Below are positions 2,337 to 36,756 of a DNA stretch of 36,929 bases, one piece after another. Position 1 is the first letter of the stretch. Each line of letters starts with the position of its first letter. The position numbers and the translations under genes are program-made. This DNA is from Octopus bimaculoides (Eukaryota): positions 46,918,246-46,955,174 of the forward strand of contig NC_068981.1 in NCBI RefSeq assembly GCF_001194135.2. Reading direction: 5' to 3'. The notes under the pieces were generated by a model. That model saw nothing but the letters and a program-made list of their open reading frames with translations, was not told the origin of the DNA and searched no databases.

Positions 2337-3018
2337 AAACATTCCTCATCAGATATAGGGGAAACAACCAAATCATTGCTGGAAATGTTGCTAGTTTGAT
2401 TTACAGATTTCTGTCTTTCACAACTATATAGCAACAATTATCCTGACCAAATTCCAGTCCTGTATCCTTTAGGAATGCTGTAACAAGACCAAGGCTATTT
2501 TTCTATCTCATACATATTCTTTGCATAAAGTTTTAAGTCATTCACAAAGAAACAGTGTGTAATTTTACNNNNNNNNNNNNNNNNNNNNNNNNNNNNNNNN
2601 NNNNNNNNNNNNNNNNNNNNNNNNNNNNNNNNNNNNNNNNNNNNNNNNNNNNNNNNNNNNNNNNNNNNNNNNNNNNNNNNNNNNNNNNNNNNNNNNNNNN
2701 NNNNNNNNNNNNNNNNNNNNNNNNNNNNNNNNNNNNNNNNNNNNNNNNNNNNNNNNNNNNNNNNNNNNNNNNNNNNNNNNNNNNNNAAACATTCCTCATC
2801 AGATATAGGGGAAACAACCAAATCATTGCTGGAAATGTTGCTAGTTTGATTTACAGATTTCTGTCTTTCACAACTATATAGCAACAATTATCCTGACCAA
2901 ATTCCAGTCCTGTATCCTTTAGGAATGCTGTAACAAGACCAAGGCTATTTTTCTATCTCATACATATTCTTTGCATAAAGTTTTAAGTCATTCACAAAGA
3001 AACAGTGTGTAATTTTAC
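2337..3018 (+). repeat. Two identical ~232-bp segments flanking an N gap (2337-2568 and 2787-3018); LINE RT-derived; probable assembly overlap
   Basis: Both copies start AAACATTCCTCATCAG and end GTGTAATTTTAC, and abut the gap 2569-2786. The minus strand encodes KITHCFFVNDLKLYAKNM. Confidence 0.9.
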
Positions 3019-3019
3019 T

Positions 3020-4400
3020 AAAACACCAAGTGCATGAATTTGAATTTATAACATGGATAAAGAAGCTGGAGATTTTGAAGCAGTTGTCTATTGTTATCCT
3101 AATTCTGTATGTTTTTCAAAGAGATATTCACTTCAGCAGGACAATTGACTTCTATGACGGTACAGACGTTTCTTTATCTGTCCCAAACAGTAATATCCGA
3201 CCTGTTATGTTTACATTTGACAGATGATTTGATGGGGATGTCTCGCTTGTATTCACTGTGTTCATGTTTGCGAATGTAGCGTAGCTACAATATCATGCCT
3301 CATAAGTAAATAATACTGTGATGACATTTTTGGGCAACTGCTTACATTGTGGTGAAATCTTCGGTATTAATTCCACAAAGCCTGCATCGATTGTCATATT
3401 TTGCTGCTTTTCCTGCATCTCTGTTCGTTTTGTGTATCAGGTATTTGTTTGATATTTCCTGTTCCTGGATGGCAAACGCAGTGGGACATCTTAATCCGGT
3501 TGTTGGTCTATGATAGACTGATTTGATGATCAAAGTTACTATCATCTCAGAGCTTTCTACTAACATATCCATGCATGGTTTGCTGCTGATATAAACTCAA
3601 GCTTTCATCTGATGATACGTTGCGGTAGACTCGTGCGACTTATTTGGGTATGTACTTAAAGTTATCAGACAAGGAATGCTGCCCAAGAAGCCGCTTTGCA
3701 AGCCTTATGATGTTATTTGCCTCATGTATGCAAATTTGGTAACGAGATGCACGTCGACAGTGGGTGGTTAATAAATGTTGCCGAAGGGATATAATGCAGC
3801 ATTCAAAGGCGGTTTGGACTGATGTCAAGCTTTTGCCGCCTTGTTTCGTTTTAGTTAGAAGAAATCTACATCACTGATGATGTGGAAATTATGAATGCTA
3901 ATTAGTTACTTCCGGGTCGTCAAGTCAATGACTCAGATCTCATCGTGCGTCCAGTCAAGCAGCCCAAATATTGATATGAGTAAAAGCACTGGAAGCACGT
4001 TGCGGGCAACTGTTTTATTGAATGCAGTGGGGCACGAGCTCCATATGTTCTTAATTCGGCTGCAATATTTTTAGTGACACATGTTTTGTTACAGGTCCCA
4101 TTGTAAGATAAGTTTTCATTCACCCAAGATACCTGTAACATTCCTCATCAGATATAGGGGAAACAACCAAATCATTGCTGGAAATGTTGCTAGTTTGATT
4201 TACAGATTTCTGTCTTTCACAACTATATAGCAATAATTATCCTGACCAAATTCCAGTCCTGTATCCTTTAGGAATGCTGTAACAAGACCAAGGCTATTTT
4301 TCTATCTCATACATATTCTTTGCATAAAGTTTTAAGTCATTCACAAAGAAACAGTGTGTAATTTTAACATTTCTATTCCATTGCGAACCAGTGATATATC
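3020..4400 (-). mobile_element. Decayed R4/Dong-like (RLE-type) non-LTR retrotransposon fragment B (RT end to endonuclease)
   Basis: Minus-strand peptides: RT motif KITHCFFVNDLKLY (DD mutated to ND), DEECYRYLG, FAIQEQEISNKYL..DNRCRLC (Cys knuckle), and an RLE-like region near 3050-3300. Multiple stops and frameshifts. Confidence 0.8.
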
Positions 4401-6950
4401 CAAGCAGCGCTATTTTCTGCAAGAGCTCTACTCTTCTTGCAGCCCCTATTTCTACCATATATTTCTAAAGATTTTACTCACTGTTCCCAGGGCTCCGACA
4501 ATTATTGGTATTACTACCATCTTTTTCAGCGACCAGAAGTGCTTCATCTTCCAAGATAATCTGTCATATCTATCGACTTTACTTTCTTCCGTATCTCATG
4601 CCTTTATTTTTCAGCTGGGTATGCTATGATCCTGTATCGTTTGTTTTCTTTCGCAATTAACACAACGTCCAGATTCCTATTCTCTATCCCATGGTCGCAC
4701 TGAATCATAAAATTCCATAGGGTTTTTGCTTTATCATTTTCGATGACGACTTCGGGTTTATGTTCACACCACTTTTTTTCACTGTCAAGTTCATACATGT
4801 TTCAAAGTGTTCAATGGTCAATATTTGCTGTGTCTTTGTTACATCTTTTATATTCTTTCTGGGCTTGTGGCGTACGTTGACTGGTAATATGCCATACGGT
4901 TTGACGTTTTTGTCCACAAATTCTGCACTTATCACTTTCTGATGTGTTGTCTATTCTGTATTTGATGTAATTGGTTCTTAATGCTTTCTCATAGGTAGCA
5001 CAGAAGCGAGCCACGGTTTCCGGTTTTAAATCACTTTTAGTCATCCATGGCCATCTTTTTGCTCTGTCCGTCTTATCTTCAATTTCTCTTTGAAATTGTT
5101 CATGCATTCTTTTCTTTATCCATTTATTTTCAGTTTCATTCATTCTCAAGTGTTTGTACAGTGCTTTCGTTTTGCAATCGTCCACCCTACACAAGCCTGG
5201 CAAACTTCCTTCCAATAACAGCGGTCCTATTGTATTTTTACATGCCATGCTATGCTGATTTCTTCTACGCTAATGCTGTGTTCCCATCCAATCTGTCCTC
5301 TGCTTCCTCTTTTTCTTGGTACATACTCTCTTTCTGTGTCACTTTTTGGGTAGAGTGTCCCATATCTATTCAGCAACTTCCTGATGTTTCTGTCTAAGTT
5401 GTTTAGCCCGTCTACTGTCCTTGCGATTACCCGTGCTCCATATCTAAGGAGTGAAACCGCCCAGGTGTTGATAGCTTTAGTCTTATTCAGTCCGTATAAT
5501 TTCGACTTAAGATCAGTCTGTGTCTGCACAAGTTCTCCTCCTTAAATTTTTGTCATTTCTCTCTGCATCAATTTATCCATTTCCAATAACCCCAGTTACT
5601 TATAGCTCGTCACCTCTATCTGCTTCATAACCATCACAGACAGTATCGCTAGCTCATCCATACATTTGATTTTGCTTCTCTTCAAGCCTCACACGCCACA
5701 ACGTTTCAGTCCGAATTCCATTCTGATATCAGCACTGACGGTATACGCCGTAACAAAGAGGGAACTGGCTTGGGATTCATCATTACCATAAAGTTTGAGG
5801 TTATCCATGAATAATAAATGGTTGATTTTTTTGTTGGCAGCTTTTGAATACATACCCAGCCCTTGCTTTCGTTAGAAGCAGTGCTAGTAGTATCATGCAT
5901 AGTAGAAAGATCACTGGCGACATGCCACTCCTGATTTCTATTGTTCCTAAACGTCTATAGGCTGTCACATCCTTCCTCCACTTCGCCATACTTTTTCCCA
6001 AGCAATCACTAAACATTCCATGCAATACCAAATAGGTTCATAAATTCTATATTTCAGGAATGTGGGATGATATTGTACGCCTTACGATATTCTATCCATG
6101 ACATAGCTAAGTTAGATTACATCCTCTTGGAGACTTTAACTACACTTTTTCCTACCAGGAGTTTCTACTTACCCTTGCAACCCTTCTGATCTATGGCAGG
6201 ACTTCATTATTTTCCCGATGTCCGTAGATTGACTCTGCGGCCATTCAAGTTAACAATTTCCACATAAGCTGCAAGCAGGATATCGGCCTGTAATTGTCTA
6301 CTGCATTGCCTTTTCCTATGTTTTTCAAGCACTACTCTGGTGTTACTCGATCAGGATTTAACAAGGTGTTGAGCTGTACAGCTATTCGTTTATGACATTC
6401 ACTAGATCTTTTGATTCAGTAGCCTTGAACTCCATCTGGTCCCGGGGCATTCCAGGTTCCCATTCTTTTGCTGATTTCCCTCACATCCCAAAGTGAAATG
6501 ACTAGTTCTGCCTGATTTGGACAGACTGCTATTTGTTTCAATTCTTGTAACCATTCAGCATCCTTCTTGTGTTCCTTTTCTTTGCTCCAGATTTCACTCA
6601 AAGAACTTTATCTGGTATCAACTTTTTATCTGTACATTCTGTATTTATGGCTTTGTAGAATCTCTTCTGATCTACTCTGAATAACTTATTCTACAGTTAT
6701 CCCTTCATTACTTGGTCGTGTCTTGCTATGTTTGCATTCTTTGGGAACGAGGCGCTGTTTCAGTTCCTCCATCACCACTTTCACGCCCATTCTTTCAACA
6801 TCATACTTCCTGTTCAATGACCTGTATTTTTGTTCTATTTTTGGTCTAGCACAGAAATTGTTTCGACAGCATATCTAACCACACCTATATTCTTATTTTC
6901 TACCGTGGATCTTTTCTTTTGTCACTCCTATTATATTTCTTTTCCTTGAT
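4401..6950 (-). mobile_element. Decayed, 5'-truncated R4/Dong-like non-LTR retrotransposon A (RT, CCHC, restriction-like endonuclease)
   Basis: Peptides WNAPGPDGVQGY, INHLLFMDNLKLY, LYGLNKTKAINTWAVSLLRYGA, PKSD..YVPRKRGSRG, KSDLKPET..YEKALRTNYIKYRIDNTSESDKCRICG, EHKPEVVIENDKAKTLWNFMIQCDH, RVELLQKIALLG. These are in the order expected for R4-clade ORFs, broken by frameshifts. Confidence 0.92.
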
Positions 6951-20227: not shown

Positions 20228-20951
20228 TATATATATACTACTGGCACAAGAACATAATCTTAATGCAGAATTCACTATATATACTACTGGCACAAGTACA
20301 TAATCTTAATGGAGAATTCACTATATATACTACTGGCACAAGTACATAATCTTAATGCAGAATTCACTATATATACTACTGGCACAAGTACATAATCTTA
20401 ATGGAGAATTCACTATATATACTACTAGCACAAGTACATAATCTTAATGCAGAATTCACTATATATACTACTGGCACAAGTACATAATCTTAATGCAGAA
20501 TTCACTATATATACTACTGGCACAAGTACATAATCTTAATGCAGAATTCACTATATATACTACTAGCACAAGTACATAATCTTAATGCAGAATTCACTAT
20601 ATATACTACTAGCACAAGTACATAATCTTAATGCAGAATTCACTATTNNNNNNNNNNNNNNNNNNNNNNNNNNNNNNNNNNNNNNNNNNNNNNNNNNNNN
20701 NNNNNNNNNNNNNNNNNNNNNNNNNNNNNNNNNNNNNNNNNNNNNNNNNNNNNNNNNNNNNNNNNNNNNNNNNNNNNNNNNNNNNNNNNNNNNTCTTAAT
20801 GCAGAATTCACTATATATACTACTAGCACAAGTACATAATCTTAATGCAGAATTCACTATATATACTACTAGCACAAGTACATAATCTTAATGCAGAATT
20901 CACTATATATACTACTAGCACAAGTACATAATCTTAATGCAGAATTCACTA
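20228..20951. repeat. 46-bp minisatellite, unit CTATATATACTACT(G/A)GCACAAGTACATAATCTTAATG(C/G)AGAATTCA
   Basis: About 9 copies before and about 3 after the gap 20648-20793; head-to-tail with no spacers. Confidence 0.97.
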
Positions 20952-22802
20952 TTCACTTATACGAACGCATTTGTATTAACTATGTGTAGTTGTTATTATT
21001 ATTGTCATCGTGTGTAGATGTTATTTTTAGCTCTAGATCATCTGCTTGTTATCGAGGAAATTAAAAACCACAAGCATTTACTCCATGACCATGCACGATT
21101 GTCCTTTTAGAATGGTATACTTCTGATTCCAGCAAAATATATATCTTTTTAAAAGAAATAGAGTGTTGCTTGAAGTAGATTTAGCTGCTGTTTCTACTTA
21201 GTTTTATCTTCTTTGAGAAGGGTATTTTACTGTGACAAAGAAAGAAGAAGCACTCCTTCGAATATTGCTTCAATTTTTAGGGATCAAATCGGCAACAGTT
21301 TCTGACAGAAAACCTTGTTTGTGTAGAGCATGTCACTTTGTTGTAATATTTCTTTTTAAAGCAAGAATATGTTTATCTCATTGATATACAAGGCGTATTT
21401 TATTTTTGATTATTCGTCTCCCATGCATTGTCTACTCTATTTCTGTCAAGCTTAAAATATTCTGTTATATTCATAACCTCCACTATAGTAGAATATACCG
21501 CTTGACTTACCACGCGATTTCCGAATAATATTTTGATTATCAACTCCAAAAAACTGTCCAGAACATGATATATTTTATTTTCCAGTATTTTTCATTAAAC
21601 TTCCACGTTCTTTTCTTTTTGCTTTCCTTCTTCTACTCAAAGTTATGCTTATTTCATAGCCATTTTGTCTTCTTTTATTATGATCTTCTTCATATTGAAT
21701 AAATGTAGATATGTTGAGCACAAGATGTGAATTTCTTTAGTGAACCCCTTCTTGCTTGAAATAGTGCTTATGTAGAAAAAATAAATACCTCTACCCTTAG
21801 ATCTATTTTGAATAATATCACTATACTTATTATGAAGTTACAAATAAAAATGTAATCTAAGTACTAGGTTTCAAATTATATAGAGAATGCAGCTGATAGT
21901 ACTAGAACCATCTATCTTGTGCGGGATTATTTTGTTAAACATTATGTAGTAACACATTAGCTTCTTAAATATGTAAGACAAATTGCATTCACTCTTTTAT
22001 CTTTAATGCGCTATCACCATTACATAATTCCTCAGCAATTCAGTTATTAATAATATGATTCATCGGAGCATATTGAAACGGAATGGATATTTGCTAGGTT
22101 AGAATATAAGAAAAATAGCGTTAACTTTTTACAGCAAGTAACTGACAAATTACCTTGAGACTTAAAACTGCACTATTTTATAGGAGAGAATTGTAGTTCG
22201 CTTGATGCATTGTGTATTGTTTGTAAAGAATAAAAAGTTTTGAATGGTACAACAATGCACTATAATACAAAAAAAAAAGGAATATATAACTATTGTAATT
22301 TAGTTATCTATAGTTCGATGATATTTCGGAATAGAATTCTTTCTTCAGATATTCTTAGATGGAGTCCCTGCTATTGGAAACTGCAGTTGCTCTCTTGTGT
22401 ATAATCTAATACGATTTCTAAGCAAGTAATACATACTTAATACTAATTCCTGAATAGGTTTGTTTAAATTTCATATCTTAAACTGATGTGTTAACGTCTA
22501 CTGTTAATCAATATCTTGACATGATTGTGGTCATCGGGTAATCAAATCTATATTGTTAATTGATATAATCCTATTTAACTTGAAAGAGAAAATTAAGAGA
22601 ATCATTAAAGTCTTAAAAGAAAGTCCTTAGAGCATATTCTGTTGGCATAACGATTTACATTTACCACTTGGTTTTATGGTTGTAGAATTATTGCTGTTAT
22701 TAATGCTATTCTCATATCTTATAAAATAGGTAGTGGTCTTCCACGCTTAGAGGCCTCTAGCGAAGGAAAGCGAATCTAACATCTTATGACAATATGGACA
22801 CA

Positions 22803-24183: not shown

Positions 24184-24477
24184 ATGAAACACAGAGCAAT
24201 TGTAATCTGCCAACGGAGATGGATGCTCCTTTGTACATTCTTCACGTTATGTAATATAGCATTGATTGGAAAAACAGAGGCATATACGAAATACCGCTGT
24301 CATTTTCCAAAGTTTCTAGAGGTTCCAGAAGGCTGGTCGGTTCAATACACTGATGGCAGTCATAAAGCAATCATTGAAAAAGGAAAACTTGATGCGAAAT
24401 CATGTGTCGCTCAGTGCCAAGAATTCGTCAGATACTGCCAAGAAGAGAAAGAAAACGGAAAATATGTCGTCTCACAT
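24184..24477 (+). CDS. Exon 1 of uncharacterised secreted/GPI-anchored Cys-rich protein (signal peptide and start of domain A1)
   Basis: ACAATGA start (A at -3); signal-peptide-like MKHR..WMLLCTFFTLCNIALIGKTEA; CHFPKFL..GW motif; 98 codons ending at the donor CAT|GTAAGA (phase 0). Confidence 0.8.
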
Positions 24478-25390
24478 GTAAGATACTCAAATTTTCTGAT
24501 TTGCTTCTAAAATTTGCTTCTACAATGTGATTTCTGAGTTTATGTCCTTGCTTGTTCTTCCGTTCTGAATTTCTGTTATAATGTACAGCATTCATTTCTT
24601 TTTCACCCACCACTTATACCCGATTTTCTGAAATTTCTAATATATAATTTTTCATGTTGTATTTCGTTGTATATTTTATTATAAAGATTGTTCAAACAAG
24701 TTATATATACATGTGTGTGTGTGTGTGCGTGCGTGCATCCGTGAGTGCCTGTGCAGGCATATATGTATACATATTTATGTATATATATGCATATAGGTGT
24801 GTGTGTATGTGCATTATATATATATATCCATTTCTGTTTTCCTTTTTATGGTGTTCGTCTTGACTTATATATATTTTAATATTTTCATCATTCATTTCAT
24901 TTTCATTGTGTTACATCTTCCTCTTTCTATTTTCCTGTTTTGCGGTTTCTTTTTTTCGTTATTTTCATCAAATTGCTATCTATCTGTTACACTTTCCGTA
25001 AATTTATTTGATGCACCGTTCGTTTTTGTTCACAAAATAAAAGCAAACTCTTTCCTTCTGTTAAAAATAAAAACTGAGTTAAAGGAAAGGTAGCATACTG
25101 CAGTGTATCTAAAATATATTAGCAAAACAAGCTATCGAATAAGAAAGCGTTTATACACATATGTAACAAATAAATACATATACGCATGCAGAAACACGCG
25201 CGCGCACATAAACATACACACACACATGCACACACAGACACATGTGCACACATGCACACACTTATGCATATGTGTGTATATACATACGCATTTATCTCTA
25301 TTTCTCGCGACCTGGCTATATGTCTGTGTCTCTCCTTCACTATATATATATATATATATATNNNNNNNNNNNNNNNNNNNNNNNNATATA

Positions 25391-26668
25391 TATGGTGCGG
25401 TGAATAAATTGTCGCCTTACCCAAAAATAAGAATAGTACTGACTTCTGATTTTAACAGAAGTATTTTACAAAAATGACATAAAAATATCTTGAAATACTA
25501 AAGCGTAAATCCATTCAATAACATGGCCATTGTCTTCAACCAGAGCTTCTAGACGACTTGGGAATCTCCTGCCACTCTTCTGATTATGTTGGTGAATGCT
25601 CTCGTAATCCTTGCCTTCAGTTCATCTTTAGTGTTACAATGAATTTTGTTGGTCACTTGCTCAAAAACGCCCCAAAATAATAATCAAGGAGTGGGGTACC
25701 TGATTGGGAAGTTCGGTGGCCAGATTTTAAGGGTGATGTTGTCGCAGAAATTGTCTAACAGCCATGGGTTCTCCTGCTCGTGTGGCATGGTGCAGAATCC
25801 TCTTGCCAGATAGAGGGTTTTCAGTAGCCGCCCTCTTGATTCAGGGAAGCACTGCCCCCTCCAGGTACTTGATGTAAGACTCCGTGCTGAGTCTAAGGTG
25901 TGTGCAAAGATGAATGGAGGCATAACGTCGCCATAACTTGTGTTCACTCCAAACACCATAATGTTGGCTAGATGTTTGATTTTTATCACTCTAAGTACAT
26001 TTTTTGGGAACACGGCAAGACAACAGTTGTTCAGTGTGTTCACCATCTGATCCTGGCAGAAATTTTTCTGGTCTGAGAAGAACCAAAGCATGTTCGGTTG
26101 GAGGGGATGCTTGAGTTTATTCAAAAGCTTCGTTGCATGGTCTTTCATCTCGTCCTTGATGGGCTGGGATAACAAATGACCTTTTCTCATCTTGTATGAC
26201 GAATACTAAATGTCTCCATGTACTACCTGCCCGATAAGAAACTCAGACAATCCCATGTCCTTGGGGATGGACCTGGTCAACTTCGAGGGATCGTTGTCAA
26301 TCATAGCCGGATATCACCAAGAAATTCAGTAGTTGTTTTCTTTTCAGAATGATCTGAGTGAGTTTTTCGAGCTTCCGTACCTTCGTAATTGACTCATCCA
26401 ACTATTTCCGAGTCCTCTGCACCGTCCTCAGATTGACCCCCCAAATACTCTGAATTGTTCGCATTGGAGCTTCCGGTGGGAATGCCAAGTATTACAGCAT
26501 ATGGTTTCCGAATTTCTGGCAGAGTGAATTGCGCCATCGTGCTCTTTTTCATACAGACTGTGCCGATCAACCCTTCTAAACTGTGTAGTCGACAACATAA
26601 AAACAAGCAATTCGCATGTGCGAAATTAGAAATATAAAATGACTACAATTTAACAATTGCACCCTTTA
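25391..26668 (-). mobile_element. Full-length decayed IS630-Tc1-mariner transposon, DD37D (maT-type)
   Basis: The transposase can be read from MAQFTLPEIRK (~26535) through YKMRKGHLLSQ, WFFSDQKNFCQDQ, MVFGV..GDVMPPFIF, EDSAPCH and IWPPN.P to NGHVIE. The reconstructed D2-D3 spacing is 37. Imperfect TIRs GGTGCGGTGAATAAATTGTCG / GGTGCAATTGTTAAATTGTAG with TA flanks. Confidence 0.85.
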
Positions 26669-27885
26669 TACACACACATACACACATGTATGTATGTATG
26701 TATGTATGTATGTATGTATGTATGCATATTTTACTCATTATTATCCTTTGCAGATTCCATAAAAGTCTACCAATTTTCCGTAATTACAATGACCACAAGT
26801 TATCTTGCATCATGCCTTCTCGCTGTGATACGATTAGGTGTGTATCTTAGAAAGAATGTGTTCTGCACTTCTGTTACAAATCTGGCCAATCTGCACGAGA
26901 TTGTACGTTTTGTGCAAGATTAACTGATGTACAACACTCTATATGGTTTTATCCGTCTGCTCATATGTAATGCCAACCTAATTTTAGCTATATACAATCG
27001 TTAACACCTCATCTTTGGAGATCAAATAATTCCTTTTCCTTTCTTTCCGGTGACTTAAGTAAACCTACTATTGAAATCCACATATCGAAACACATAAACG
27101 TTAACTTTAAACGCAATTCATTAGATGTGACAATACACCGGTGCAGATAGATAAAATGAGTTAAAAATCCAGGGGCAAGCACGAAATTGTTCGTTGGAAA
27201 TTATTTGTACTGCAATAACTAAAAGAGAACTGTAAGGATGGAGATATATTCAGATGTTCAACTTTTGAAACCTCTCTCGATTTCTCAGTTGCTGCGGAGC
27301 CATACTTTGAAATTATCTAGCAAATTCCCCAAATACCATTATATGCTGATTTTGAACAACGGGAGTTTGTAAGTAGCACTCCTGGATAAGAAAAATATAG
27401 CTGTTTCTTTCAAGCTTTCAATTATAGTATTTTCATTACTGCGGCAAATAGGTTGTCATGTTCATAGCCTGTGATAATGTCTTATGATATTCATAATACT
27501 CTGCTAGTTCGTAAGTATACTGTACTGAATATAATATAATTTCCTCACCAAGAAATTATGCTGAAATTATTCCTAGACGAGCCATGCACAGAAAAATTAG
27601 AATATATTTTTTAATCTTTTTACAAAGTCCAAACCAAGTCAGATTTAGATATATAATATGATAAAAAGAAAAAAAAGATTGTGATTGGTGAAGAAACACT
27701 TCAGATACACATGTTTTCTGTCTGAAATAAAAGACGGAATGATTATGCTTGAATATTGATGGACATCTTTGTAAGCAGTTTAATGTTCATTTAGGTTTTC
27801 TTGACTGTAAGGATAATATAAACGTTCATATATATATATATACAAAGTTCCATTTTCGTTACGGATATATTCAAGGCAATCTGTG

Positions 27886-28525
27886 TACTAGGTGATATGA
27901 AAAGATTTCCGGACTAGTTGTGTTTAATCAAAAAATGTTTAATAAAAAATATCTCAGTGAAGAATCCAGTCTTTCGCGCTCCATAGATGTGGCCACTTTA
28001 GCTGAATGTCTTCTCTCAAATGCTTCAACGCGTTGCAGTAGAACTCTCCCTTGACAGTTTGGCTCAGGGGGACAAATTCTCGATATGAAATACCACATTT
28101 CCAGGGTTGACGCTTGTGGCAGATCTTCCACATCGGTCATCGTCTTCCTGAGCGCTCATAGCCTTTCAGGGACCTTCTTCTGCTTTTGAAACATCCGAAA
28201 CATTGCAGATGACCCATTGCTCCGTCGCTGTAAGCTTGCCGAATCATGCCCCATGTTTCTGTAGCAGACATCCCAAGTTTAACACAAAATTTCACATTGG
28301 CTCTTTGTTTCTGTCCATGACAAAATTGCATATTACAGCATACGCATGATCACCCCCACCCCAACAAAACACAAATTTCACAACTAGCGAAGTAAACACA
28401 GCGATGTCATTCGGCACATTGTCTCATGGCGGTCATTGCTAGTTCACACTGCACATGCAATCGTGTGATGACATCTGTTACCATGCTACAGAAATAGTCC
28501 GGGAACTTGTTCATACCATGTCGTA
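27886..28525 (-). mobile_element. Internally deleted mariner-family element (~640 bp)
   Basis: TIRs TACTAGGTGATATGAAAAGATTTCCGGACT and (reverse complement) TACGACATGGTATGAACAAGTTCCCGGACT; HTH peptide QRANVKFCVKLGMSATETWGMIRQAYSD..ERSGR; catalytic C-terminus missing. Confidence 0.85.
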
Positions 28526-29261
28526 GAATGAAGTACAAAATAGACTTCCATACTTAAAATAATAATGTAGCTCTAAAATGTAAAAACATGTTTATTGTTC
28601 TAAACTCTCTAACAGGTTTTAACTATATCACTAATATTAATTAACAGTAAACAATAGGAACATTTAAGCTATTATCTAACTAACATATTTTTGTACATCG
28701 GAAATCATCCATTCTTGTCAATATATAGAAAAATTACTTACAGTGAATACTGAATATTTTACATATATTGTCATTTATTAATATCTCCGAACTTAGATTA
28801 GTCATTGATAAAAACAAATCGATAACACAACATGGTTCCCATATTAAAGTCCAAAGAGAGGTTTATCTTTAAAAGAATTTCAAAAATGTTTTTAATAAAT
28901 GTTCATTTAATTCAGTCTATTTAAAATTCACTGTTGAAATATAATAGCACATTTTGTTAGACTTTATAGTCTTGAATAATATTGATTTTTGTCAATGACA
29001 TGTTCAGAGAATAAATAATAGCATTTTTCATCGATACCACAAAAGTTTAATTATTAAATGTTGGATTATTGAACGTAGTTGTTAGCCTATCAAAGTATAA
29101 ACAAATATTTCGAGTCCATTGTTGTAAACAAACAATTAAACTCAACTCCGTAATAGTGGACTATGTGATTACAAAAACGCGCTAAAGTTTTCTTTTTACA
29201 CATTAATATAGAATCTATGATATAAAGGAATCACTGACGCCAATAAGCACATTTAGTATTA

Positions 29262-29370
29262 AATACTGCAGCATTGAGAAGTGAGGTGTGTAGCTCAAAA
29301 GAACAATGCAGGCCCTATCCGTGTTTCGAACACGCGACCATTTGATCGATAATCCAATACCTTAAATGGA
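29262..29370 (-). mobile_element. Degenerate tRNA-derived SINE head
   Basis: The reverse complement has a B-box-like GGTCGCGTGTTCGAAAC followed by TTGAGC..CAC core-like sequence; no cloverleaf. Confidence 0.45.
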
Positions 29371-30739
29371 TTATCGTCTTCACACACACGCGCAAAATGC
29401 ATGCATGCGTTTATACGAGAGAGGAAAGCAGACAGAGACAGTGATAAAGATGGATTGAGAGAGCGAAAGAGAGAAAGAAAGTGAAAGAGAAAAGCGAAGA
29501 CAGACAAAGATGGAGAGATAGATAACATTTAGATAATTGTAGTTGTATCTGTCAGGTGATAAGTTTTGGTGCTGGTGTCTAAGACGAGAATTATTTGTTG
29601 TAAGGTACGTGTGAGTGGTAAAATATTTTCATTCCTAGCTGTTAGAATAATCTATTGTTTTGAAATGTTTTAGCGTTTCGAAGATTATATTTTGCAGGAA
29701 GACACTAATTTCAATTTATTGTTCAATAATTGAGTTCTACATAAGACGATATGATAGGATTCATTGGTAGAGATGTGTCAGGTTTAGACTTGTTTTGTTT
29801 TTTCGCATAATTGTTCGTGGGTGAGTATTTTTCAGTTATAGATAAAGTTTTGATTTATTTCCCACGGCTGTTTAGATTGTGGATTTTTTCTCTTGTTTGG
29901 GTTGCATAGCTTATAAATGTGCGCATATACGACAAGTACACATATTTGAAATTTCATGTATGTTTTTGTGCGTGCACTTGAGGACTCTATATCTGAAAGA
30001 AAGTTCCATATTACAATATCTCAATTGTAAACAGACTAAAATAAAAGTATTTTGTTTCTTCAAATGCCAGAGAATTTGATTAATTTTTACGGAGAAAGAG
30101 TTATTACTAATCCAAGACATCTTCAGTATTTGAAAATATCTCAATTATGCACAGTCATTATCGCTTACAATGCTTGATGATGCAGCTGATACTTTAAACA
30201 TTTCCTCACTCTAAATCTTTATATGTGTCCTCATTCAACTGACGAGCAAACTAATTATATGTTAACGAAAGAATATACGACAAACACCTACCACTTGCAA
30301 CATTTACTCTCTAGCGTGTTAAGCCAGTTTGCAATTTAACTTGGAATTTTGTAATCTGTTATTAAATTACATAAGTTTTGTGAAACTCTAAAATATAAAG
30401 TAGAAGAAATGACATTTTTAGTGATGTCTTTTCCAAGTCTCGTTCCTCACGAAGTAACACGATCCTTGTTCTCACGAGTGATGAAAATTTGATATTGTTT
30501 ATTTTCTACTTTCTTCCTTCAATTGTGTTTCCATTTCTTCCCGAGTGTCTTCCCGACACACAGGGCAATGAAACTCACTGCACAAATGTGTATGCTATTA
30601 AAATAAACACACAAGATTGTCCATTTACAAACTCAAGTTATGTGAAGGAAAAGGTGGAAAAGATGAAAGAAGGAAAACGGAAAGGAGTAAAAATGTAAAA
30701 AATGAAAACAATGAAAAAAAGCTAAACATATTAAGGGGA

Positions 30740-31897
30740 AAAAAGGAAATAAAATTCACAGTGACACTGCTTTACTCAATACTTGTGACGTACCAGCTAA
30801 AACATCCTTTGCACTTTTTCCGTATATGGTAAGGCAGGGATCATTCTCAAATAATTTTGAGTTCCTTTTTCCATAAATTCCGAGTTCTCTTACAATCACT
30901 GATATTGTATCCGACTTCAGATGGCATAATTCTTTGATTCCAATGAGCAAATCACTATATTTTCTGAGCTCATTAAATTCTTTTGCCGAGATATGTTGAT
31001 CACAAAGTATGCTCATGTCAATCAATATACAAACCTCATTGTTTTGGTTTTTAGCAATAATATTTGGGTTATTAGCTTTGATTGTCCGGTCTGTATGTCC
31101 TGGAAAGTCCAAAGAAATCGTTGCATTTTGTCCCCCAGTTATAGTCTCAGGGTTGTGCATACATCATTTGTCAGCAGTTTTGATTTTATCATGTCGTTAT
31201 ATTAACCATTGTTGATATTGGCCAACTCTGTCATGTTTTGTTTTAGACTCTATAGCTGTTACAACCTTGCTCCCAGAGATTAGGTGTTTCACTATTTCCA
31301 TCTCATTGTTGCAGTATCGCCACTTGGGATCTACTTTATTTTTCATTACATTGGCAGTTAAGATAAACCCTTCGCTCTCTGTCTTTAAACCTGAGATCCG
31401 TAGCCACTGAAGGCTGTAGACCACTTTTGGTCTACATCAGCTTGTTTACTACAGGTGACATATTAGTTATGCAGAGGATTTTGTTTTCACCTATGAACTA
31501 AATGTTCAAACGCTATTTGCTTTTGCCATTGATTTTACCTTCGTTGCAACAACACTTGCCACACTTCTATTACACCGTTCAATCTGAATATTATGCATGA
31601 GCTCGTTAGTAAATTTTTCTCTCCTTCATAACTGAATGAAACTTCTTTCGCCTCTCGTGGTTTTCAGCGAGTTTTAGCATCCAATCATTAGATGTTTCAA
31701 GAGATTTTGGCCAGTCCAATTGAGGTGGTTTTGTAAGAGATTTCAAACTGAACCAAGCCTCGAACGTCTTGGGTTCTGGGAAGTTAAAGATGATCTGCGT
31801 CTACCTTTGGGTGGTGCATCTTATTGCAAGTCAGCTGCTTTCGGATTTTCCTGTCAATCTTCTTTATTTTGTTCATATTCTAGTTTAACACATCATG
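30740..31897 (-). mobile_element. Decayed 5'-truncated R4/Dong-like LINE fragment C (post-RT, Cys knuckle, RLE)
   Basis: IDRKIRKQLTCNKMHHPKVDADHL.LPR..RGLVQFE; SLQWLRISGLKTESEGFI; KHDRVGQY; DRTIKANNPNII..CILIDMS..KEFNELRKYSDL; ends VLSKAVSL*. Confidence 0.88.
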
Positions 31898-31901
31898 ATT
31901 A

Positions 31902-31966
<65 letters not shown>

Positions 31967-32019
31967 TGTTATTGTTGTTGTTGTTGTTGTTGTTGTTATT
32001 ATGATTATCATTGATGATC

Positions 32020-32069
<50 letters not shown>
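31897..32069. repeat. (ATT)n/(GTT)n compound microsatellite
   Basis: Directly visible, between LINE C and the exon 2 acceptor. Confidence 0.97.
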
Positions 32070-32088
32070 GTGTTTTTATATTCTTCAG

Positions 32089-33720
32089 GAGGAAAAAGAT
32101 GATCCACGCGCCAAATACCTTTGCATGCAGTTTATTAAAAGGAGTAATGCCGTAATGCAGATACGAATGTCACCACTGAGCTCTTCCGACGACGGAATAT
32201 GCAATGACACCCGTTTGATGATGGATGACTGGCCTCTCCTATCCGTCCATTTATTTCATACAACAGAAGTTAAATGCCCTTTTGAAGGAGGCTATGATTT
32301 TGATATAAAATTACCTTCAGGTGAAAAAGTGTGTACAAGTAAAATGTTACCATTTCGGTTTGAAAGTTATTGTGTTGACGAAGAAGGTCTATTACTTAGA
32401 ATTCGTGATAAGACATGTACAGATTACATAGGAAATTTAAAGGAGGAGAACAGACTCCGTTGTTTGGCAACATGGAAACATGGTAAAGATACGTATGTGA
32501 TTGTACGAGAAACTGATGTTGTGCGCTATTGGTGTATGCGCATCATATACGACGATAACGGTATGATTAGCAGAATTTATTTCTTCTTAGATATGATATG
32601 TGATACGAAAACTATATTCCCTACAAGTCGAAAATATCTTGTTTTTGAAATGTATCATCGGGTAATCCGAAGCATATGCAGTGATGAATTTGAAACATGT
32701 AGCAGTCATAATATGTGTAATTCGGAACACAGGTCGCACTGCCTGGAATCTTGTGGTGATTGCCAAATTAAAGCCTTTAGTAAATTTCGTGGTCTTCAAG
32801 CCTGTACCTTCCCAAAGGTTATGCATGGTACTTGGGTGAGGCATGTCAACCAAGGAACGAGCAAAATCACAATAAGTAATAACACAGTCAACATTAATAC
32901 TGAAACAAATTGGCATTGTATTGATGCAGGAGAAGGTAACTATTCTCGAAGACGAGTTCTAATGAAAACATTTGATAACGGTTGCTATCCACGTTTTATG
33001 TGTATCGAACTTCATGAAGCAGCTCCTTCAGTTATGCGATACCGAGTAGGAAAAATTGTTCTTTGGCCTCTGAACATTAGTCATTTACTTCAAGAACATG
33101 TCTGTAATGATAATCTTTTTGCACATAATAGTCCCACATTACCTTCTCAAAGAATCACTCCTTTGCAGAATTTAGTCCGCTCTTATGATAAAAGAACCGT
33201 TTCTTGTAATCTACCGCCTGGACTGGGAACATGGATAGCCTTCCGCGACGAGAAAGCGCGACGTGGCTGCCTCTTAAATGACATTCATTTTGTACCGCAC
33301 CATATGTTTTTGGTGATGGAGAACGAAGAGGGGAAGCACATAACACATGCTGAGTACTTTTGCCTTGCGTCTATGAAATTCATAAATGAATATGACACAA
33401 TAATTACGCAAACAAAAGATCAAAGTAATGAATATTTGTGTTGGATGATCATTGGTAACAAGGAATTCATTATGCTTCCTGCATCTCTCTGTAACAGAGT
33501 TCACGCTGAGGCAGTCTTGAGAAGAGTTGAGAAGCCCTTAGCAAGACTAAGTCTCATAAATAACAGTGAATGCAAACGTGCAGACGAGGAATGGCGTCAA
33601 AGAGTTATAGAAGAAAGAAACAAACATGATAATGTAGAGGTGTCTAAATCCATTGCTACGAATACCCGAGGATGCCTAGCGTTAATTGCATTTTTTATGA
33701 CATATCTGACGTTACACTGA
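32089..33720 (+). CDS. Exon 2 (terminal, 543 aa) of uncharacterised Cys-rich GPI-anchor-like protein with ShKT-like motif
   Basis: 1632-bp uninterrupted non-repetitive reading frame, by far the longest in the window. Regular Cys/Trp pattern, five N-glycosylation sequons (NDT, NNT, NYS, NIS, NNS), hydrophobic C-terminus, TGA stop. Confidence 0.93.
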   Translation, partial: EEKDDPRAKYLCMQFIKRSNAVMQIRMSPLSSSDDGICNDTRLMMDDWPLLSVHLFHTTEVKCPFEGGYDFDIKLPSGEKVCTSKMLPFRFESYCVDEEGLLLRIRDKTCTDYIGNLKEENRLRCLATWKHGKDTYVIVRETDVVRYWCMRIIYDDNGMISRIYFFLDMICDTKTIFPTSRKYLVFEMYHRVIRSICSDEFETCSSHNMCNSEHRSHCLESCGDCQIKAFSKFRGLQACTFPKVMHGTWVRHVNQGTSKITISNNTVNINTETNWHCIDAGEGNYSRRRVLMKTFDNGCYPRFMCIELHEAAPSVMRYRVGKIVLWPLNISHLLQEHVCNDNLFAHNSPTLPSQRITPLQNLVRSYDKRTVSCNLPPGLGTWIAFRDEKARRGCLLNDIHFVPHHMFLVMENEEGKHITHAEYFCLASMKFINEYDTIITQTKDQSNEYLCWMIIGNKEFIMLPASLCNRVHAEAVLRRVEKPLARLSLINNSECKRADEEWRQRVIEERNKHDNVEVSKSIATNTRGCLALIAFFMTYLTLH

Positions 33721-34824
33721 TGAATGTAATAGGTATATAAAATATTTAATTATATATAAAAACAAAACAAATATAATGGTATACGCAAATTATGTATATA
33801 TATATNNNNNNNNNNNNNNNNNNNNNNNNNNNNNNNNNNNNNNNNNNNNNNNNNNNNNNNNNNNNNNNNNNTATGTATGTATGTATTTATATATATATAT
33901 ATATATACGTGTGTATAACCTTGTTTACCAAACTGGGAAAAGATTGTGTGCACACAAATAAATGAAATAAATACTAATAAATTGACCAAATCCAACAACA
34001 GCAAACATTTATATGAATTAATATATGCGTATGAGCCATGAAATAAGAACATGTTCATCACAAAAAAACAACACTAACAACAAATATAAACCTTAATATA
34101 CTGATAAGAAGTAATTTTCCCATTAAATCATCGGATAAATAAAACCACTATCAATGAAGCAGTTAAAATATTACGAAAAGCTACGTCAATTTTTAAACCC
34201 TATTCTTTTATTATGGATTTGGTAGTTATGTCTGGCGATAAGCTTGTGCAGAGCAGGGAGAATGATTAAAAAAATTACTGACGATGTAAAGAGACTGAAA
34301 AGTGTCCAAGAAACCAGCGAGCAATAGAAAGTAAAATGCACAAGTACACAAAATGTTCACGGAATTATGACACTGAAAATAAATGATACATTGAGGGTAA
34401 GACAAATGAAAACAGAATAAAAGTTAATATAAATGGTTTGACAAGAAGACAATCATGGGTAGAAAGGGAAATAATGAGATATAAAGAAAACAAAATACGT
34501 TTTTATCAAAATCTCACTAGGGATATAATGCTAAGACATTTCAATAAAAAGGAAGAATTTAAACAAACGATTGTAAATGCAAAAATTCATCCGCTACACT
34601 TTCCGTTATGTAAAAGGCTCTAGTTGCGTGGAAGGTTATATGTAAGGATTGAAAGAAAACTTAAGTGAGTAGGGGAAAGGACGGTCTAAAAAAAATTGAA
34701 TGAAATAAAGGGGGAAACCGAATGAGAGAGAATGATGTGAACAGTAAAAGAGATGAAGAAATTTGGTGTTATCGTTAGAGAATCGCGAAACCAAGGTGAG
34801 TTAAGCAGAACATTAAAGAAGAGA

Positions 34825-36104: not shown

Positions 36105-36756
36105 TATATAACATACATATGAGAAGGGATGACCACTAAGTGGATATCCATTATGCTAGACATAAACCATCTACGGTCAAACCACAAAAAAAAAAGAATG
36201 TTCTCTAGGTAAATTCACACACACCAGAAAATGAACGGGCAAGACAAATGAAAATATACAAAATAAAATATTAATCGTAGACCAGGCTTCGCACATTATT
36301 GGATTAATGTAATGTTTACTTACATAACCCATCAGTTGCTCATCAGTACGACCGTTCAATTCAATATAATTTGCAGAATTCAGTATAACTTGCAGTCCAG
36401 CTCTGGGACTTTTGAAAATAATTCCGATGTAATCGGTAGAACTGTACGCATGTCTAATCTTATGTGGACAACTCGTGAAATGTTCTGCAAATTATATTGA
36501 ATTGAACGGTCGTACTCTTAAGTCACGGATAGGTTATGTGAGTAAAAATTACATTAATCCAATAATGTGTGAAACCTGGTGTATGATAAATTATTTATTT
36601 TGTATATTTTCATTTGTCTTGCCCGTTCATTTTCTGGTGTGCGCTGAATTTCCCTAGAGAACATTCTCTTCTCTTGTGGTTTGACCGTAGATGGTCTGTC
36701 ACTAGCATAATGGATGTCCACTTAGTGGGCATCTCCTCCCATATGAATGTTATATA
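36105..36756. mobile_element. Fold-back / MITE-like element: ~274-bp inverted arms (36105-36378, 36483-36756) and 104-bp spacer
   Basis: The left arm aligns along its length to the reverse complement of the right arm, with long exact blocks such as CACACCAGAAAATGAACGGGCAAGACAAATGAAAATATACAAAATAAA and AGTACGACCGTTCAATTCAATATAATTTGCAGAA. TA-rich flanks; no ORF. Confidence 0.85.

What the first reader, a model, noticed from the sequence alone, without database searches (positions are those of the whole stretch)
24184..33720. Two distant ORFs form one ~641-aa uncharacterised surface protein
ORF 24184 supplies the signal peptide and ORF 32011 the body. Phase-0 donor and acceptor join them to give RYCQEEKENGKYVVSH|EEKDDPRAKYLCMQFIKRSNAVMQIR, which completes a domain whose second copy lies intact in exon 2. 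I cannot assign a gene name. The motifs recall invertebrate uncharacterised families (DUF7042/7043/7044-type, from memory, unverified).
Basis: partly seen in the sequence, partly recalled or inferred. Interest (0 to 1): 0.7.

Follow-up and report, generated by a model that had tools for sequence, protein, structure and literature searches.

The report
Two-exon octopus surface protein gene

Summary
Exon 1 (24184-24477, donor GTAAGA) and exon 2 (32089-33720, acceptor ...ttcag) join in phase 0. The 641-aa product is 100% identical over its full length to NCBI "uncharacterized protein LOC106884017 [Octopus bimaculoides]".

The N gap (25362-25385) lies inside the roughly 7.6-kb intron, within a TA microsatellite, and no coding frame crosses it.

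The exon junction completes a Pfam DUF7043 domain. Relatives align across it without a gap, and a Mactra relative encodes the same stretch in one exon.

The architecture is: signal peptide, then DUF7043-DUF7042, then a degenerate six-cysteine ShKT linker, then a diverged second copy of that two-domain module (DUF7043/7044 and DUF7045-like), then a helical stalk and a hydrophobic tail at the very C-terminus (GPI-signal-like).

AlphaFold2 gives a confident all-beta model (pLDDT 90). It has no significant match in the PDB or in a viral structure library. Relatives with a species name come from molluscs, an annelid and a nemertean, and none has a known function. No paper mentions the family.

My best reading is a non-enzymatic, membrane-tethered extracellular binding protein. 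That mechanism is inferred, not shown. The gene and the family were already catalogued, so interest is low.

The parts
24184..24477 (+). Coding exon 1 (aa 1-98): start codon, signal peptide (aa 1-33, 24184-24282) and the N-terminal half of the first DUF7043 domain (aa 37-98, 24292-24477)
   Evidence: for sequence and frame. for the hydrophobic core at aa 13-30; exon 1 alone matches DUF7043 profile positions 3-53; eight family members hit this exon by tblastn, E down to 2e-7.
24478..32088 (+). Intron, 7611 nt as written. Donor GTAAGA at 24478-24483; T-rich tract and acceptor AG at 32087-32088
   Evidence: No family homology inside it. It holds degenerate transposon remnants, with a weak Mos1 HTH_48 match at 28137-28331 on the minus strand.
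25362..25385 (.). Assembly gap (24 N) inside the intron, within a (TA)n microsatellite
   Evidence: No coding frame crosses it.
31898..32069 (+). (ATT)57 microsatellite ending 19 nt before the acceptor. Its translation gives the false poly-Leu start of ORF 32011
32089..33720 (+). Coding exon 2 (aa 99-641 plus the TGA stop)
   Evidence: The acceptor position is conserved in three other cephalopod genomes. The ORF is intact in all four.
32089..32232 (+). C-terminal half of the first DUF7043 domain (aa 99-146)
   Evidence: profile positions 61-102, 29.5 bits; the joined sequence matches positions 3-102.
32266..32631 (+). DUF7042 domain (aa 158-279)
   Evidence: 51.5 bits against a cut-off of 27, E 1.3e-13.
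32677..32763 (+). Six-cysteine linker (aa 295-323, spacing C-x6-C-x5-C-x7-C-x3-C-x2-C): a degenerate ShKT-type domain
   Evidence: All six Cys are invariant in 67 family linkers. 31 of the 67 linkers match Pfam ShK PF01549, best E 8.6e-8. The octopus copy itself does not match.
32797..33126 (+). Second DUF7043 copy, also matched by DUF7044 (aa 335-444)
   Evidence: DUF7043 E 2.8e-12, DUF7044 E 3.3e-7; hhalign of domain copy 1 against copy 2 gives probability 98.4%.
33226..33495 (+). DUF7045-like domain (aa 478-567), the diverged counterpart of DUF7042
   Evidence: only 14.9 bits, E 0.03; hhalign of the DUF7042 region against this region gives probability 95.5%, E 1.4e-8.
33562..33633 (+). Predicted charged alpha-helical stalk (aa 590-613)
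   Evidence: secondary structure read from the AlphaFold2 model.
33670..33717 (+). C-terminal hydrophobic tail (aa 626-641), preceded by small residues S617/S619/A621: GPI-attachment-signal-like
   Evidence: hydropathy 2.0, ending one residue before the C-terminus; 74 of 87 relatives have such a tail, and in 54 of them 6 or fewer residues follow it.

Best explanation
This is the two-exon protein-coding gene LOC106884017 of Octopus bimaculoides.

Proposed route of the product. It enters the secretory pathway through a cleaved N-terminal signal peptide. It folds into a disulfide-rich ectodomain with 30 cysteines and five N-glycosylation sequons. It is then held on the outer face of the plasma membrane by its C-terminal hydrophobic signal. 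A GPI anchor is the most likely form of attachment; a bare membrane-spanning tail is the alternative.

Ectodomain. It is an ancient internal duplication of a two-domain all-beta module: DUF7043+DUF7042, then DUF7043/7044+DUF7045-like. The two modules are joined by a degenerate ShKT knot and raised on a short helical stalk.

Proposed function. I think it acts as a non-catalytic extracellular binding or recognition protein, with each beta module offering a binding surface or pocket. It belongs to a paralogue-rich family whose named members are all lophotrochozoan.

Shown versus inferred. Shown: the gene structure, domain content, internal duplication, family membership and coding constraint. Inferred: secretion, the GPI anchor, and above all the binding role.
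For: Gene model.
- Identical to the NCBI protein, with the same gene span.
- Canonical GT..AG join in phase 0.
- DUF7043 is split by the intron and restored by the join.
- Relatives align without a gap across the junction.
- Mactra has the corresponding stretch in one exon.
- The acceptor is conserved in three other cephalopod genomes.
- pLDDT is 96-97 at the junction.

A functional gene.
- Exon 2 is intact in four cephalopods.
- dN/dS is 0.25-0.59 among the decapod orthologues.

Topology.
- N-terminal hydrophobic core and a C-terminal hydrophobic tail at the very end of the protein.
- The same pattern is seen in 77 of 87 relatives (N-terminus) and 74 of 87 (C-terminus). A few relatives instead have a real cytoplasmic tail.
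- The mature part has an even number of cysteines (30), most of them invariant or nearly so.

Architecture.
- Module 1 against module 2 by hhalign: probability 99%, E 9e-18.
- ShK matches at the homologous linker in 31 of 67 relatives.
- Confident all-beta model: pLDDT 90.3, pTM 0.83.

Non-enzymatic.
- Conserved columns are Cys, Gly, Trp, Pro and Phe, plus R116, Q122, E190, R249 and N395.
- No conserved His, Ser or Asp set is present.
- No enzyme family is matched in Pfam.

Family.
- 476 representatives (50%-identity clusters) at E<=1e-3.
- Named members come from cephalopods, bivalves, gastropods, an annelid and a nemertean, and all are labelled hypothetical or uncharacterised.
Against: - No transcript reads were examined, so the junction rests on homology, splice consensus and NCBI's model.
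- No signal-peptide or GPI predictor was available. The tail could be a transmembrane anchor.
- The binding role is argued by exclusion and by analogy with other tethered multi-domain ectodomains. No ligand, partner, expression site or structural homologue supports it.
- Foldseek found nothing significant. The best local leads are nitrophorin 2/4 (prob 0.77, E about 0.3), then FABP, YceI, TbpB and HphA, all with TM 0.35 or less.
- Conserved R, Q, E and N residues could still form an active site.
Confidence: 0.6

Rival explanations
1. The beta modules are calycin-like barrels (the lipocalin, FABP and avidin type). On this reading the protein is a tethered carrier or scavenger of a small hydrophobic ligand, haem or lipid at the cell surface. 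It would be a two-lobed binder, loosely like the bacterial surface lipoproteins TbpB and HphA.
For: - The model shows runs of consecutive beta-hairpins in each domain.
- The only local Foldseek matches with noticeable probability are meander barrels: nitrophorin 4 and 2 (prob 0.77), intestinal FABP (prob 0.38, rmsd 6.0 over 127 columns), YceI, HphA and TbpB.
- A conserved C-x-F-P...G-x-W motif opens each DUF7043 copy. From memory, this resembles the lipocalin G-x-W motif.
Against: - None of the matches is significant: E is 0.02 or higher and TM 0.35 or less.
- No Lipocalin, Avidin or FABP Pfam match appears in any of 69 relatives, even at E<=1.
- The full-length search dilutes single-domain signals, and per-domain searches could not be run.
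Confidence: 0.2
2. The protein is a tethered ShKT-type modulator. The central ShKT knot would act on an ion channel or receptor in the same or a neighbouring membrane. This is loosely the way GPI-anchored Ly6/lynx-type prototoxins act on nicotinic receptors, or the way the ShKT domain of MMP23 acts on potassium channels. Both comparisons are from established knowledge, not tested here.
For: A ShKT domain at a fixed position between the two modules is a family-wide feature. Its six cysteines are invariant, and 31 of 67 linkers match Pfam ShK. The protein is probably membrane-tethered.
Against: - The octopus copy is shortened and falls below any Pfam ShK score.
- Apart from the cysteines, no linker column reaches 90% conservation.
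- ShKT domains are common structural knots in many extracellular proteins that have no channel activity.
- The linker is about 5% of the protein, while the large beta modules are the conserved bulk.
Confidence: 0.07
3. The protein is a structural or organising component of an extracellular matrix (cuticle, mucus, shell or egg coat) rather than a receptor-like binder. Drosophila Knickkopf, a GPI-anchored organiser of chitin, works in this way (from memory).
For: It is a secreted, tethered, disulfide-rich, multi-domain protein of about 650-700 aa. The family is large and restricted to invertebrates as far as the named members show.
Against: No DM13, DOMON, chitin-binding or other matrix domains were found. 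There are no low-complexity or repetitive matrix-type regions. There are no expression data.
Confidence: 0.08
4. The model is an assembly or annotation artefact. On this reading exon 1 and exon 2 belong to different genes, or to paralogues brought together across the gap.
For: A gap of unknown true size lies between the exons. The orthologue models in other cephalopods lack exon 1, and I could not find it within 10 kb upstream of them.
Against: - The two exons carry complementary halves of one domain, on the same strand and in the right order.
- Relatives align contiguously across the join.
- pLDDT is 96-97 across the join.
- The gap sits inside a TA microsatellite, which is typical of an unsized repeat rather than a scaffold join.
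- The truncated orthologue models start at internal Met codons or within the intron, and each has the same acceptor directly upstream.
Confidence: 0.03

Closest known systems
Pfam DUF7043 / DUF7042 / DUF7044 / DUF7045 proteins (PF23070, PF23069, PF23071, PF23073), for example 'DUF7043 domain-containing protein' of Sinanodonta woodiana, Pomacea canaliculata and Paralvinella palmiformis
   Same: - Same domain set and order, and a similar length (about 650-700 aa).
- Same signal peptide and C-terminal hydrophobic tail.
- Same conserved cysteine framework.
- The window's protein is itself already in this family in public databases.
   Different: - Only 20-33% identical to non-cephalopod members.
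- Its ShKT linker is shorter and undetectable by Pfam.
- The cephalopod gene has an intron inside the first DUF7043 domain, whereas Mactra has its intron at aa 368/369.
ShKT (ShK toxin-like) domain, Pfam PF01549
   Same: Six cysteines ending in C-x3-C-x2-C and a C-x-D start. 31 of 67 family linkers at the homologous position match PF01549. The family profile weakly aligns with solved ShK-type peptides, E 0.22-2.5.
   Different: The octopus copy gives no Pfam match even at E<=1. Its loops are shorter. Here the domain is an internal linker of a large protein, not a free peptide.
GPI-anchored metazoan ectodomain proteins in general (for example Ly6/uPAR proteins, glypicans, Knickkopf)
   Same: Signal peptide, cysteine-rich glycosylated ectodomain, small residues, a short polar spacer, and a hydrophobic tail of about 14 aa at the extreme C-terminus.
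   Different: No sequence or domain relationship to any of them. GPI attachment was not tested.
Calycin-type meander beta-barrels (nitrophorins and other lipocalins, FABP, YceI) and two-lobed barrel-plus-handle surface binders (TbpB, HphA)
   Same: All-beta hairpin-meander modules. These are the only local Foldseek leads. The two-lobed layout is loosely similar.
   Different: The matches are not significant: E is 0.02 or higher and TM 0.35 or less. There is no sequence-profile match. This is a resemblance only, not membership.

Membership tests
DUF7043-DUF7042-DUF7044-DUF7045 protein family (Pfam) | DUF7043 (PF23070) score above the gathering cut-off of 27 bits | tested here: met
   83.7 bits, E 1.4e-23, two copies at aa 37-146 and 335-444.
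DUF7043-DUF7042-DUF7044-DUF7045 protein family (Pfam) | DUF7042 (PF23069) score above the cut-off of 27 bits | tested here: met
   51.5 bits, aa 158-279.
DUF7043-DUF7042-DUF7044-DUF7045 protein family (Pfam) | DUF7044 (PF23071) score above the cut-off of 27 bits | tested here: met
   30.3 bits at aa 335-417. The same stretch scores higher with DUF7043 (47.4 bits), so the two models describe related domains.
DUF7043-DUF7042-DUF7044-DUF7045 protein family (Pfam) | DUF7045 (PF23073) at the C-terminal domain position | tested here: inconclusive
   The whole protein scores 27.8 bits, but the best stretch lies on the DUF7042 region (aa 202-255). The C-terminal region alone scores 14.9 bits, E 0.03. 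Profile-profile comparison links it to the DUF7042 region at probability 95.5%.
DUF7043-DUF7042-DUF7044-DUF7045 protein family (Pfam) | Full-length collinear homology to other members | tested here: met
   324 representatives at E<=1e-10, most of them aligned over about profile positions 10-580. Alignments A2 and A3.
ShKT domain (PF01549) | Six-cysteine framework ending in C-x3-C-x2-C | tested here: met
   C295, C302, C308, C316, C320 and C323. All six are invariant in 67 relatives.
ShKT domain (PF01549) | Profile score above the Pfam cut-off (20.9 bits) | tested here: not met
   The octopus linker gives no match at E<=1. 31 of 67 homologous linkers do match at E<=0.01. It is therefore filed as a degenerate homologue by position, not as a scoring member.
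GPI-anchored proteins | Cleavable N-terminal signal peptide | tested here: inconclusive
   Hydropathy peak of 2.24 at aa 14-28 and T-E-A|Y at positions -3/-1. No SignalP-type predictor was available.
GPI-anchored proteins | C-terminal signal: small omega-site residues, a polar spacer, and a hydrophobic tail with no cytoplasmic extension | tested here: inconclusive
   S617/S619/A621, the spacer TNTRG, and a hydrophobic stretch at aa 627-640 followed by one residue. The pattern holds across the family. No GPI predictor was available.
GPI-anchored proteins | Release from the membrane by PI-PLC, or a lipid-anchor mass | not testable with these tools
   This is an experimental test.
Calycin / lipocalin-like barrels | Significant structural match to an 8-10-stranded meander barrel | tested here: not met
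   The best such matches have prob 0.77, E about 0.3 and TM 0.35 or less. Per-domain searches were not possible.
Calycin / lipocalin-like barrels | Sequence-profile match (Pfam Lipocalin, Avidin or FABP families) | tested here: not met
   None in 69 relatives at E<=1.

The most novel reading that the evidence does not exclude
The DUF7043/7042 module would be a new extracellular beta fold. It would form a two-lobed, GPI-tethered ligand-binding protein with an embedded ShKT knot, in a paralogue-rich family whose identifiable members are all lophotrochozoan. The family would serve surface recognition or channel/receptor modulation, making it a previously unrecognised class of invertebrate cell-surface receptors.
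Probability: 0.12. Interest if true: 0.55.

Novelty: already known. Interest (0 to 1): 0.22.

Why it matters
As a gene call it adds nothing new. NCBI already holds the identical 641-aa model, and its DUF domains are already recorded for it.

Its modest value is as an entry point to a sizeable family that nobody has studied. The family has at least 476 clusters at 50% identity. It gives a confident predicted structure with no significant counterpart among solved structures, and it has a clear secreted, tethered architecture.

Three points sharpen the annotation:
- The protein is an internal duplication of a two-domain module.
- The central linker is a decayed ShKT domain.
- The cephalopod orthologue models in public data are 5'-truncated.

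If the family proved to be a new class of surface receptors or tethered modulators in molluscs, annelids and nemerteans, that would interest invertebrate cell biologists. Nothing here shows it.

Tried and rejected
1. Two further word-indexed protein searches, using the 6- and 87-sequence alignments, returned only the same six proteins. They gave no new names or taxa.
2. The first AlphaFold2 run with six sequences was poor (pLDDT 64) and was not used.
3. Foldseek of the good model against the PDB and BFVD gave no significant match.
4. Profile searches against PDB sequences gave only noise (MIF, ICAM-2, a nanobody) and weak ShK-type peptides.
5. Literature searches returned nothing. Terms were DUF7042-45, LOC106884017, relatives' locus names and PF14564.
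6. Three cluster look-ups named only lophotrochozoan members. Most representatives are unnamed Logan or ENA contigs, so the true taxonomic range is unknown.
7. Exon 1 of the other cephalopod orthologues was not found within 10 kb upstream.
8. The MbtH match at aa 41-62 (18.3 bits against a cut-off of 27) is rejected as chance.
9. Intronic and upstream ORFs that look like transposon remnants gave only one weak Pfam match, HTH_48 at E 0.008.
10. An enzyme reading was rejected for lack of a conserved catalytic-type residue set or any enzyme family match.


Full report
**1. Observation**

The window is from Octopus bimaculoides assembly GCA_001194135.2, chromosome record CM046601.1.

ORF 24184 opens with ATG, with A at position -3, and runs 98 codons to ...GTC TCA CAT. 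That is followed by GTAAGA at 24478, and the frame stops at 24508-24510.

ORF 32011 begins inside an (ATT)57 microsatellite at 31898-32069. This explains its artificial poly-Leu start. After the T-rich tract gtgtttttatattcttcag, the AG at 32087-88 is followed at 32089 by GAG GAA AAA GAT..., in the same frame as ORF 32011.

That protein is 100% identical over 100% of its length to NCBI 'uncharacterized protein LOC106884017 [Octopus bimaculoides]'. The annotated gene range is 9537 nt, the same as 24184-33720.

**2. The assembly gap**

The 24 N at 25362-25385 lie within the intron (24478-32088), with (TA)n on both sides. No coding frame has to cross them, so continuity or frame at the gap does not affect the protein. 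Only the intron length is uncertain.

A hidden exon in or near the gap is unlikely, for four reasons.
- tblastn of 86 family members against the whole window hits only the two exons.
- The query coordinates on the two exons are contiguous. P0021, for example, aligns at aa 26-87 up to 24471 and at aa 89-541 from 32092.
- In the Mactra antiquata relative, aa 1-368 are encoded by one exon, which covers the octopus junction.
- The AlphaFold2 model has pLDDT 96-97 in the blocks around residues 90-110.

A second gap (33806-33871) lies 86 nt after the stop codon. It can only affect the 3' UTR.

**3. The junction completes a domain**

Pfam places DUF7043 at aa 37-146, profile positions 3-102 of 104, across the exon boundary at aa 98/99.

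Scanned separately, exon 1 matches profile positions 3-53 (15.2 bits). The first 52 residues of exon 2 match positions 61-102 (29.5 bits).

A second DUF7043 copy sits at aa 335-444 (E 2.8e-12), wholly inside exon 2.

The acceptor is at the same codon in three other cephalopod genomic loci: L002, L003 (Acanthosepion pharaonis) and L004. The gene models for those loci (P0002, P0003, P0004) lack exon 1 and start at internal or spurious Met codons. I did not find their exon 1 within 10 kb upstream.

The Mactra gene has its single intron elsewhere, at aa 368/369, just after the ShKT linker. The cephalopod intron is therefore not shared with Mactra.

**4. Anatomy of the protein**

| Region (aa) | Feature | Evidence |
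|---|---|---|
| 1-33 | Signal peptide: hydrophobic core 13-30, T-E-A\|Y site | |
| 37-146 | DUF7043, copy 1 | |
| 158-279 | DUF7042 | |
| 295-323 | Six-cysteine ShKT-like linker | |
| 335-444 | DUF7043 copy 2 / DUF7044 | |
| about 478-567 | Weak DUF7045 | |
| 590-613 | Predicted charged helix | |
| 614-624 | Low-confidence spacer | |
| 626-640 | Hydrophobic tail, ending one residue before the C-terminus | |

*Internal duplication.* Profile-profile comparison of slices of the 87-sequence alignment shows that module 1 (aa 36-292) and module 2 (aa 334-600) are homologous over 210 columns, with probability 99% and E 9e-18. The match also holds domain by domain: 98.4% for the DUF7043 copies and 95.5% for DUF7042 against the DUF7045-like region.

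*The linker.* The octopus linker gives no Pfam match. Its six cysteines are nevertheless invariant across 67 relatives. 31 of the 67 homologous linkers match Pfam ShK, best E 8.6e-8. The family profile weakly aligns there with solved ShK-type peptides. I read it as a decayed ShKT domain.

*Other features.* The mature ectodomain has 30 cysteines and five N-x-S/T sequons.

*Family-wide topology.* Of 87 relatives, 77 have an N-terminal hydrophobic segment and 74 a C-terminal one. In 54 of these 74, six or fewer residues follow it. Only two of the 74, including P0108, have more than 15 residues after the segment, which suggests a real cytoplasmic tail. This pattern is typical of GPI-attachment signals, with occasional switches to a transmembrane anchor. 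No GPI predictor was available, so this is an inference.

**5. Structure**

With 87 sequences, AlphaFold2 gives mean pLDDT 90.3 and pTM 0.83. Each module is all-beta and made largely of consecutive hairpins.

Foldseek of the whole model against the PDB gives no match with TM above 0.12 over long alignments. The one hit below E 1e-3 has TM 0.10 and rmsd 21.8 Å.

Local leads are all below significance: nitrophorin 4 and 2 (prob 0.77, E about 0.3, TM 0.30-0.35), intestinal FABP, YceI, HphA and TbpB. The viral library gives nothing.

No calycin-type Pfam family is matched by any of 69 relatives, even at E<=1. 'Meander barrel, calycin-like' is therefore a lead, not a result.

**6. Family and constraint**

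A profile search of 1.84 billion cluster representatives finds 476 proteins at E<=1e-3 and 192 at E<=1e-30. Most are 600-750 aa and collinear with the query.

Named members come from these groups:
- Cephalopods: Acanthosepion.
- Bivalves: Sinanodonta, Potamilus, Mactra.
- Gastropods: Nucella, Pomacea, Babylonia.
- An annelid: Paralvinella.
- A nemertean: Lineus.

All are labelled hypothetical, uncharacterised or 'DUF7043 domain-containing'. The Mactra label 'Cilia and flagella associated protein 61' does not fit the domain content and is probably an annotation error.

Most representatives carry no name, so the range beyond Lophotrochozoa is unknown.

Exon 2 is an intact ORF in four cephalopod genomes. 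Among the decapod orthologues dN/dS is 0.25-0.59. Synonymous sites are saturated between octopus and the decapods. The gene is therefore under purifying but rather relaxed constraint, as is often seen for extracellular proteins.

Longer relatives add no informative partner domains.

**7. Mechanism**

- *Shown:* the gene structure, the domain architecture, the internal duplication, family membership and coding constraint.
- *Inferred with moderate confidence:* entry into the secretory pathway, disulfide-rich glycosylated ectodomain, and tethering by a GPI anchor or a minimal transmembrane tail.
- *Inferred with low confidence:* a non-catalytic binding or recognition role for the two beta modules.

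The low-confidence inference rests on two observations. Conserved columns are almost all Cys, Gly, Trp, Pro or Phe, with no His/Ser/Asp-type set. No enzyme family is matched.

The rivals are a calycin-like small-ligand carrier, a tethered ShKT-type channel modulator, a matrix organiser, and an assembly artefact. They are set out in the Rival explanations section with their tests.

**8. Comparison with what is known, and novelty**

The protein is a scoring member of the Pfam DUF7043/7042/7044 family. It is a positional, non-scoring homologue of the ShKT domain. It resembles GPI-anchored ectodomain proteins in layout only.

The exact protein and its DUF annotation are already public. No paper in the searchable library mentions the family or the gene.

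**9. Verdict**

The finding is an ordinary, already catalogued gene of unknown function.

The points added here are the internal duplication, the decayed ShKT linker, the GPI-like tail across the family, the absence of the cephalopod intron from the Mactra gene, and the truncated orthologue models.

Interest is 0.22.

Noticed in passing
window 31898-32069: An (ATT)57 microsatellite ends 19 nt before the exon-2 acceptor. It supplies much of the T-rich tract and produces the false poly-Leu N-terminus of ORF 32011.
   Followed up: yes
window 2337-2568 and 2787-3018 (flanking gap 2569-2786); also 4137-4366: The 232 bases on the two sides of an assembly gap are 100% identical, which looks like unmerged overlapping contig ends. 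A third copy, 99.6% identical, lies 1.1 kb further on.
   Followed up: partly
window 20230-20952: A minisatellite with a period of about 46 bp and copies 96-100% identical, interrupted by the gap at 20648-20793.
   Followed up: partly
window 36105-36378 and 36483-36756: An inverted repeat with arms of about 275 bp at 88% identity, separated by about 100 bp. It may be a foldback or MITE-type element.
   Followed up: no
window 25684-26190 (-), 27928-28331 (-), 30756-31160 (-): Intronic ORFs that look like decayed transposon genes. Only 28137-28331 gives a weak Pfam match, to the Mos1 transposase HTH_48 domain (E 0.008, below the cut-off). The others match nothing.
   Followed up: partly
window 2495-2887 (-), 4811-5529 (-): ORFs with motifs like the tail of a reverse transcriptase. 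The only Pfam match is a very weak one to zf-RVT (E 0.47). They are probably LINE remnants.
   Followed up: partly
window 33806-33871: A second assembly gap lies 86 nt downstream of the stop codon, inside a TA/TG-rich stretch. It may fall in the 3' UTR. An AATAAA follows at about 33959.
   Followed up: no
L002 10001-11653; L003 10001-11569; L004 598-2232: The public gene models of the orthologue in three other cephalopod assemblies are 5'-truncated. They lack exon 1 and begin at internal or intronic Met codons. The conserved acceptor lies at L002 10021/10022, L003 9934/9935 and L004 576/577.
   Followed up: yes
L005 2001-6120 (Mactra antiquata, P0006): A family member is named 'Cilia and flagella associated protein 61' in its source, which does not fit its DUF7043/7042/7044 content. 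Its single intron is at aa 368/369, not at the cephalopod position.
   Followed up: partly
protein P0095, aa 37-81 (family representative, not in the window): One relative matches Pfam PF14564 'Membrane_bind' (28.9 bits against a cut-off of 25) on top of its DUF7043 region. None of 69 other relatives does. I could not establish what that Pfam family is.
   Followed up: partly
family representatives P0037, P0050, P0062, P0071, P0076, P0084, P0093, P0107 (C-termini): A subgroup ends with a hydrophobic stretch followed by a short Cys-rich tail (...FQIPCLCK...). This suggests a transmembrane anchor with possible acylation sites rather than a GPI signal. Their source organisms are unknown.
   Followed up: no
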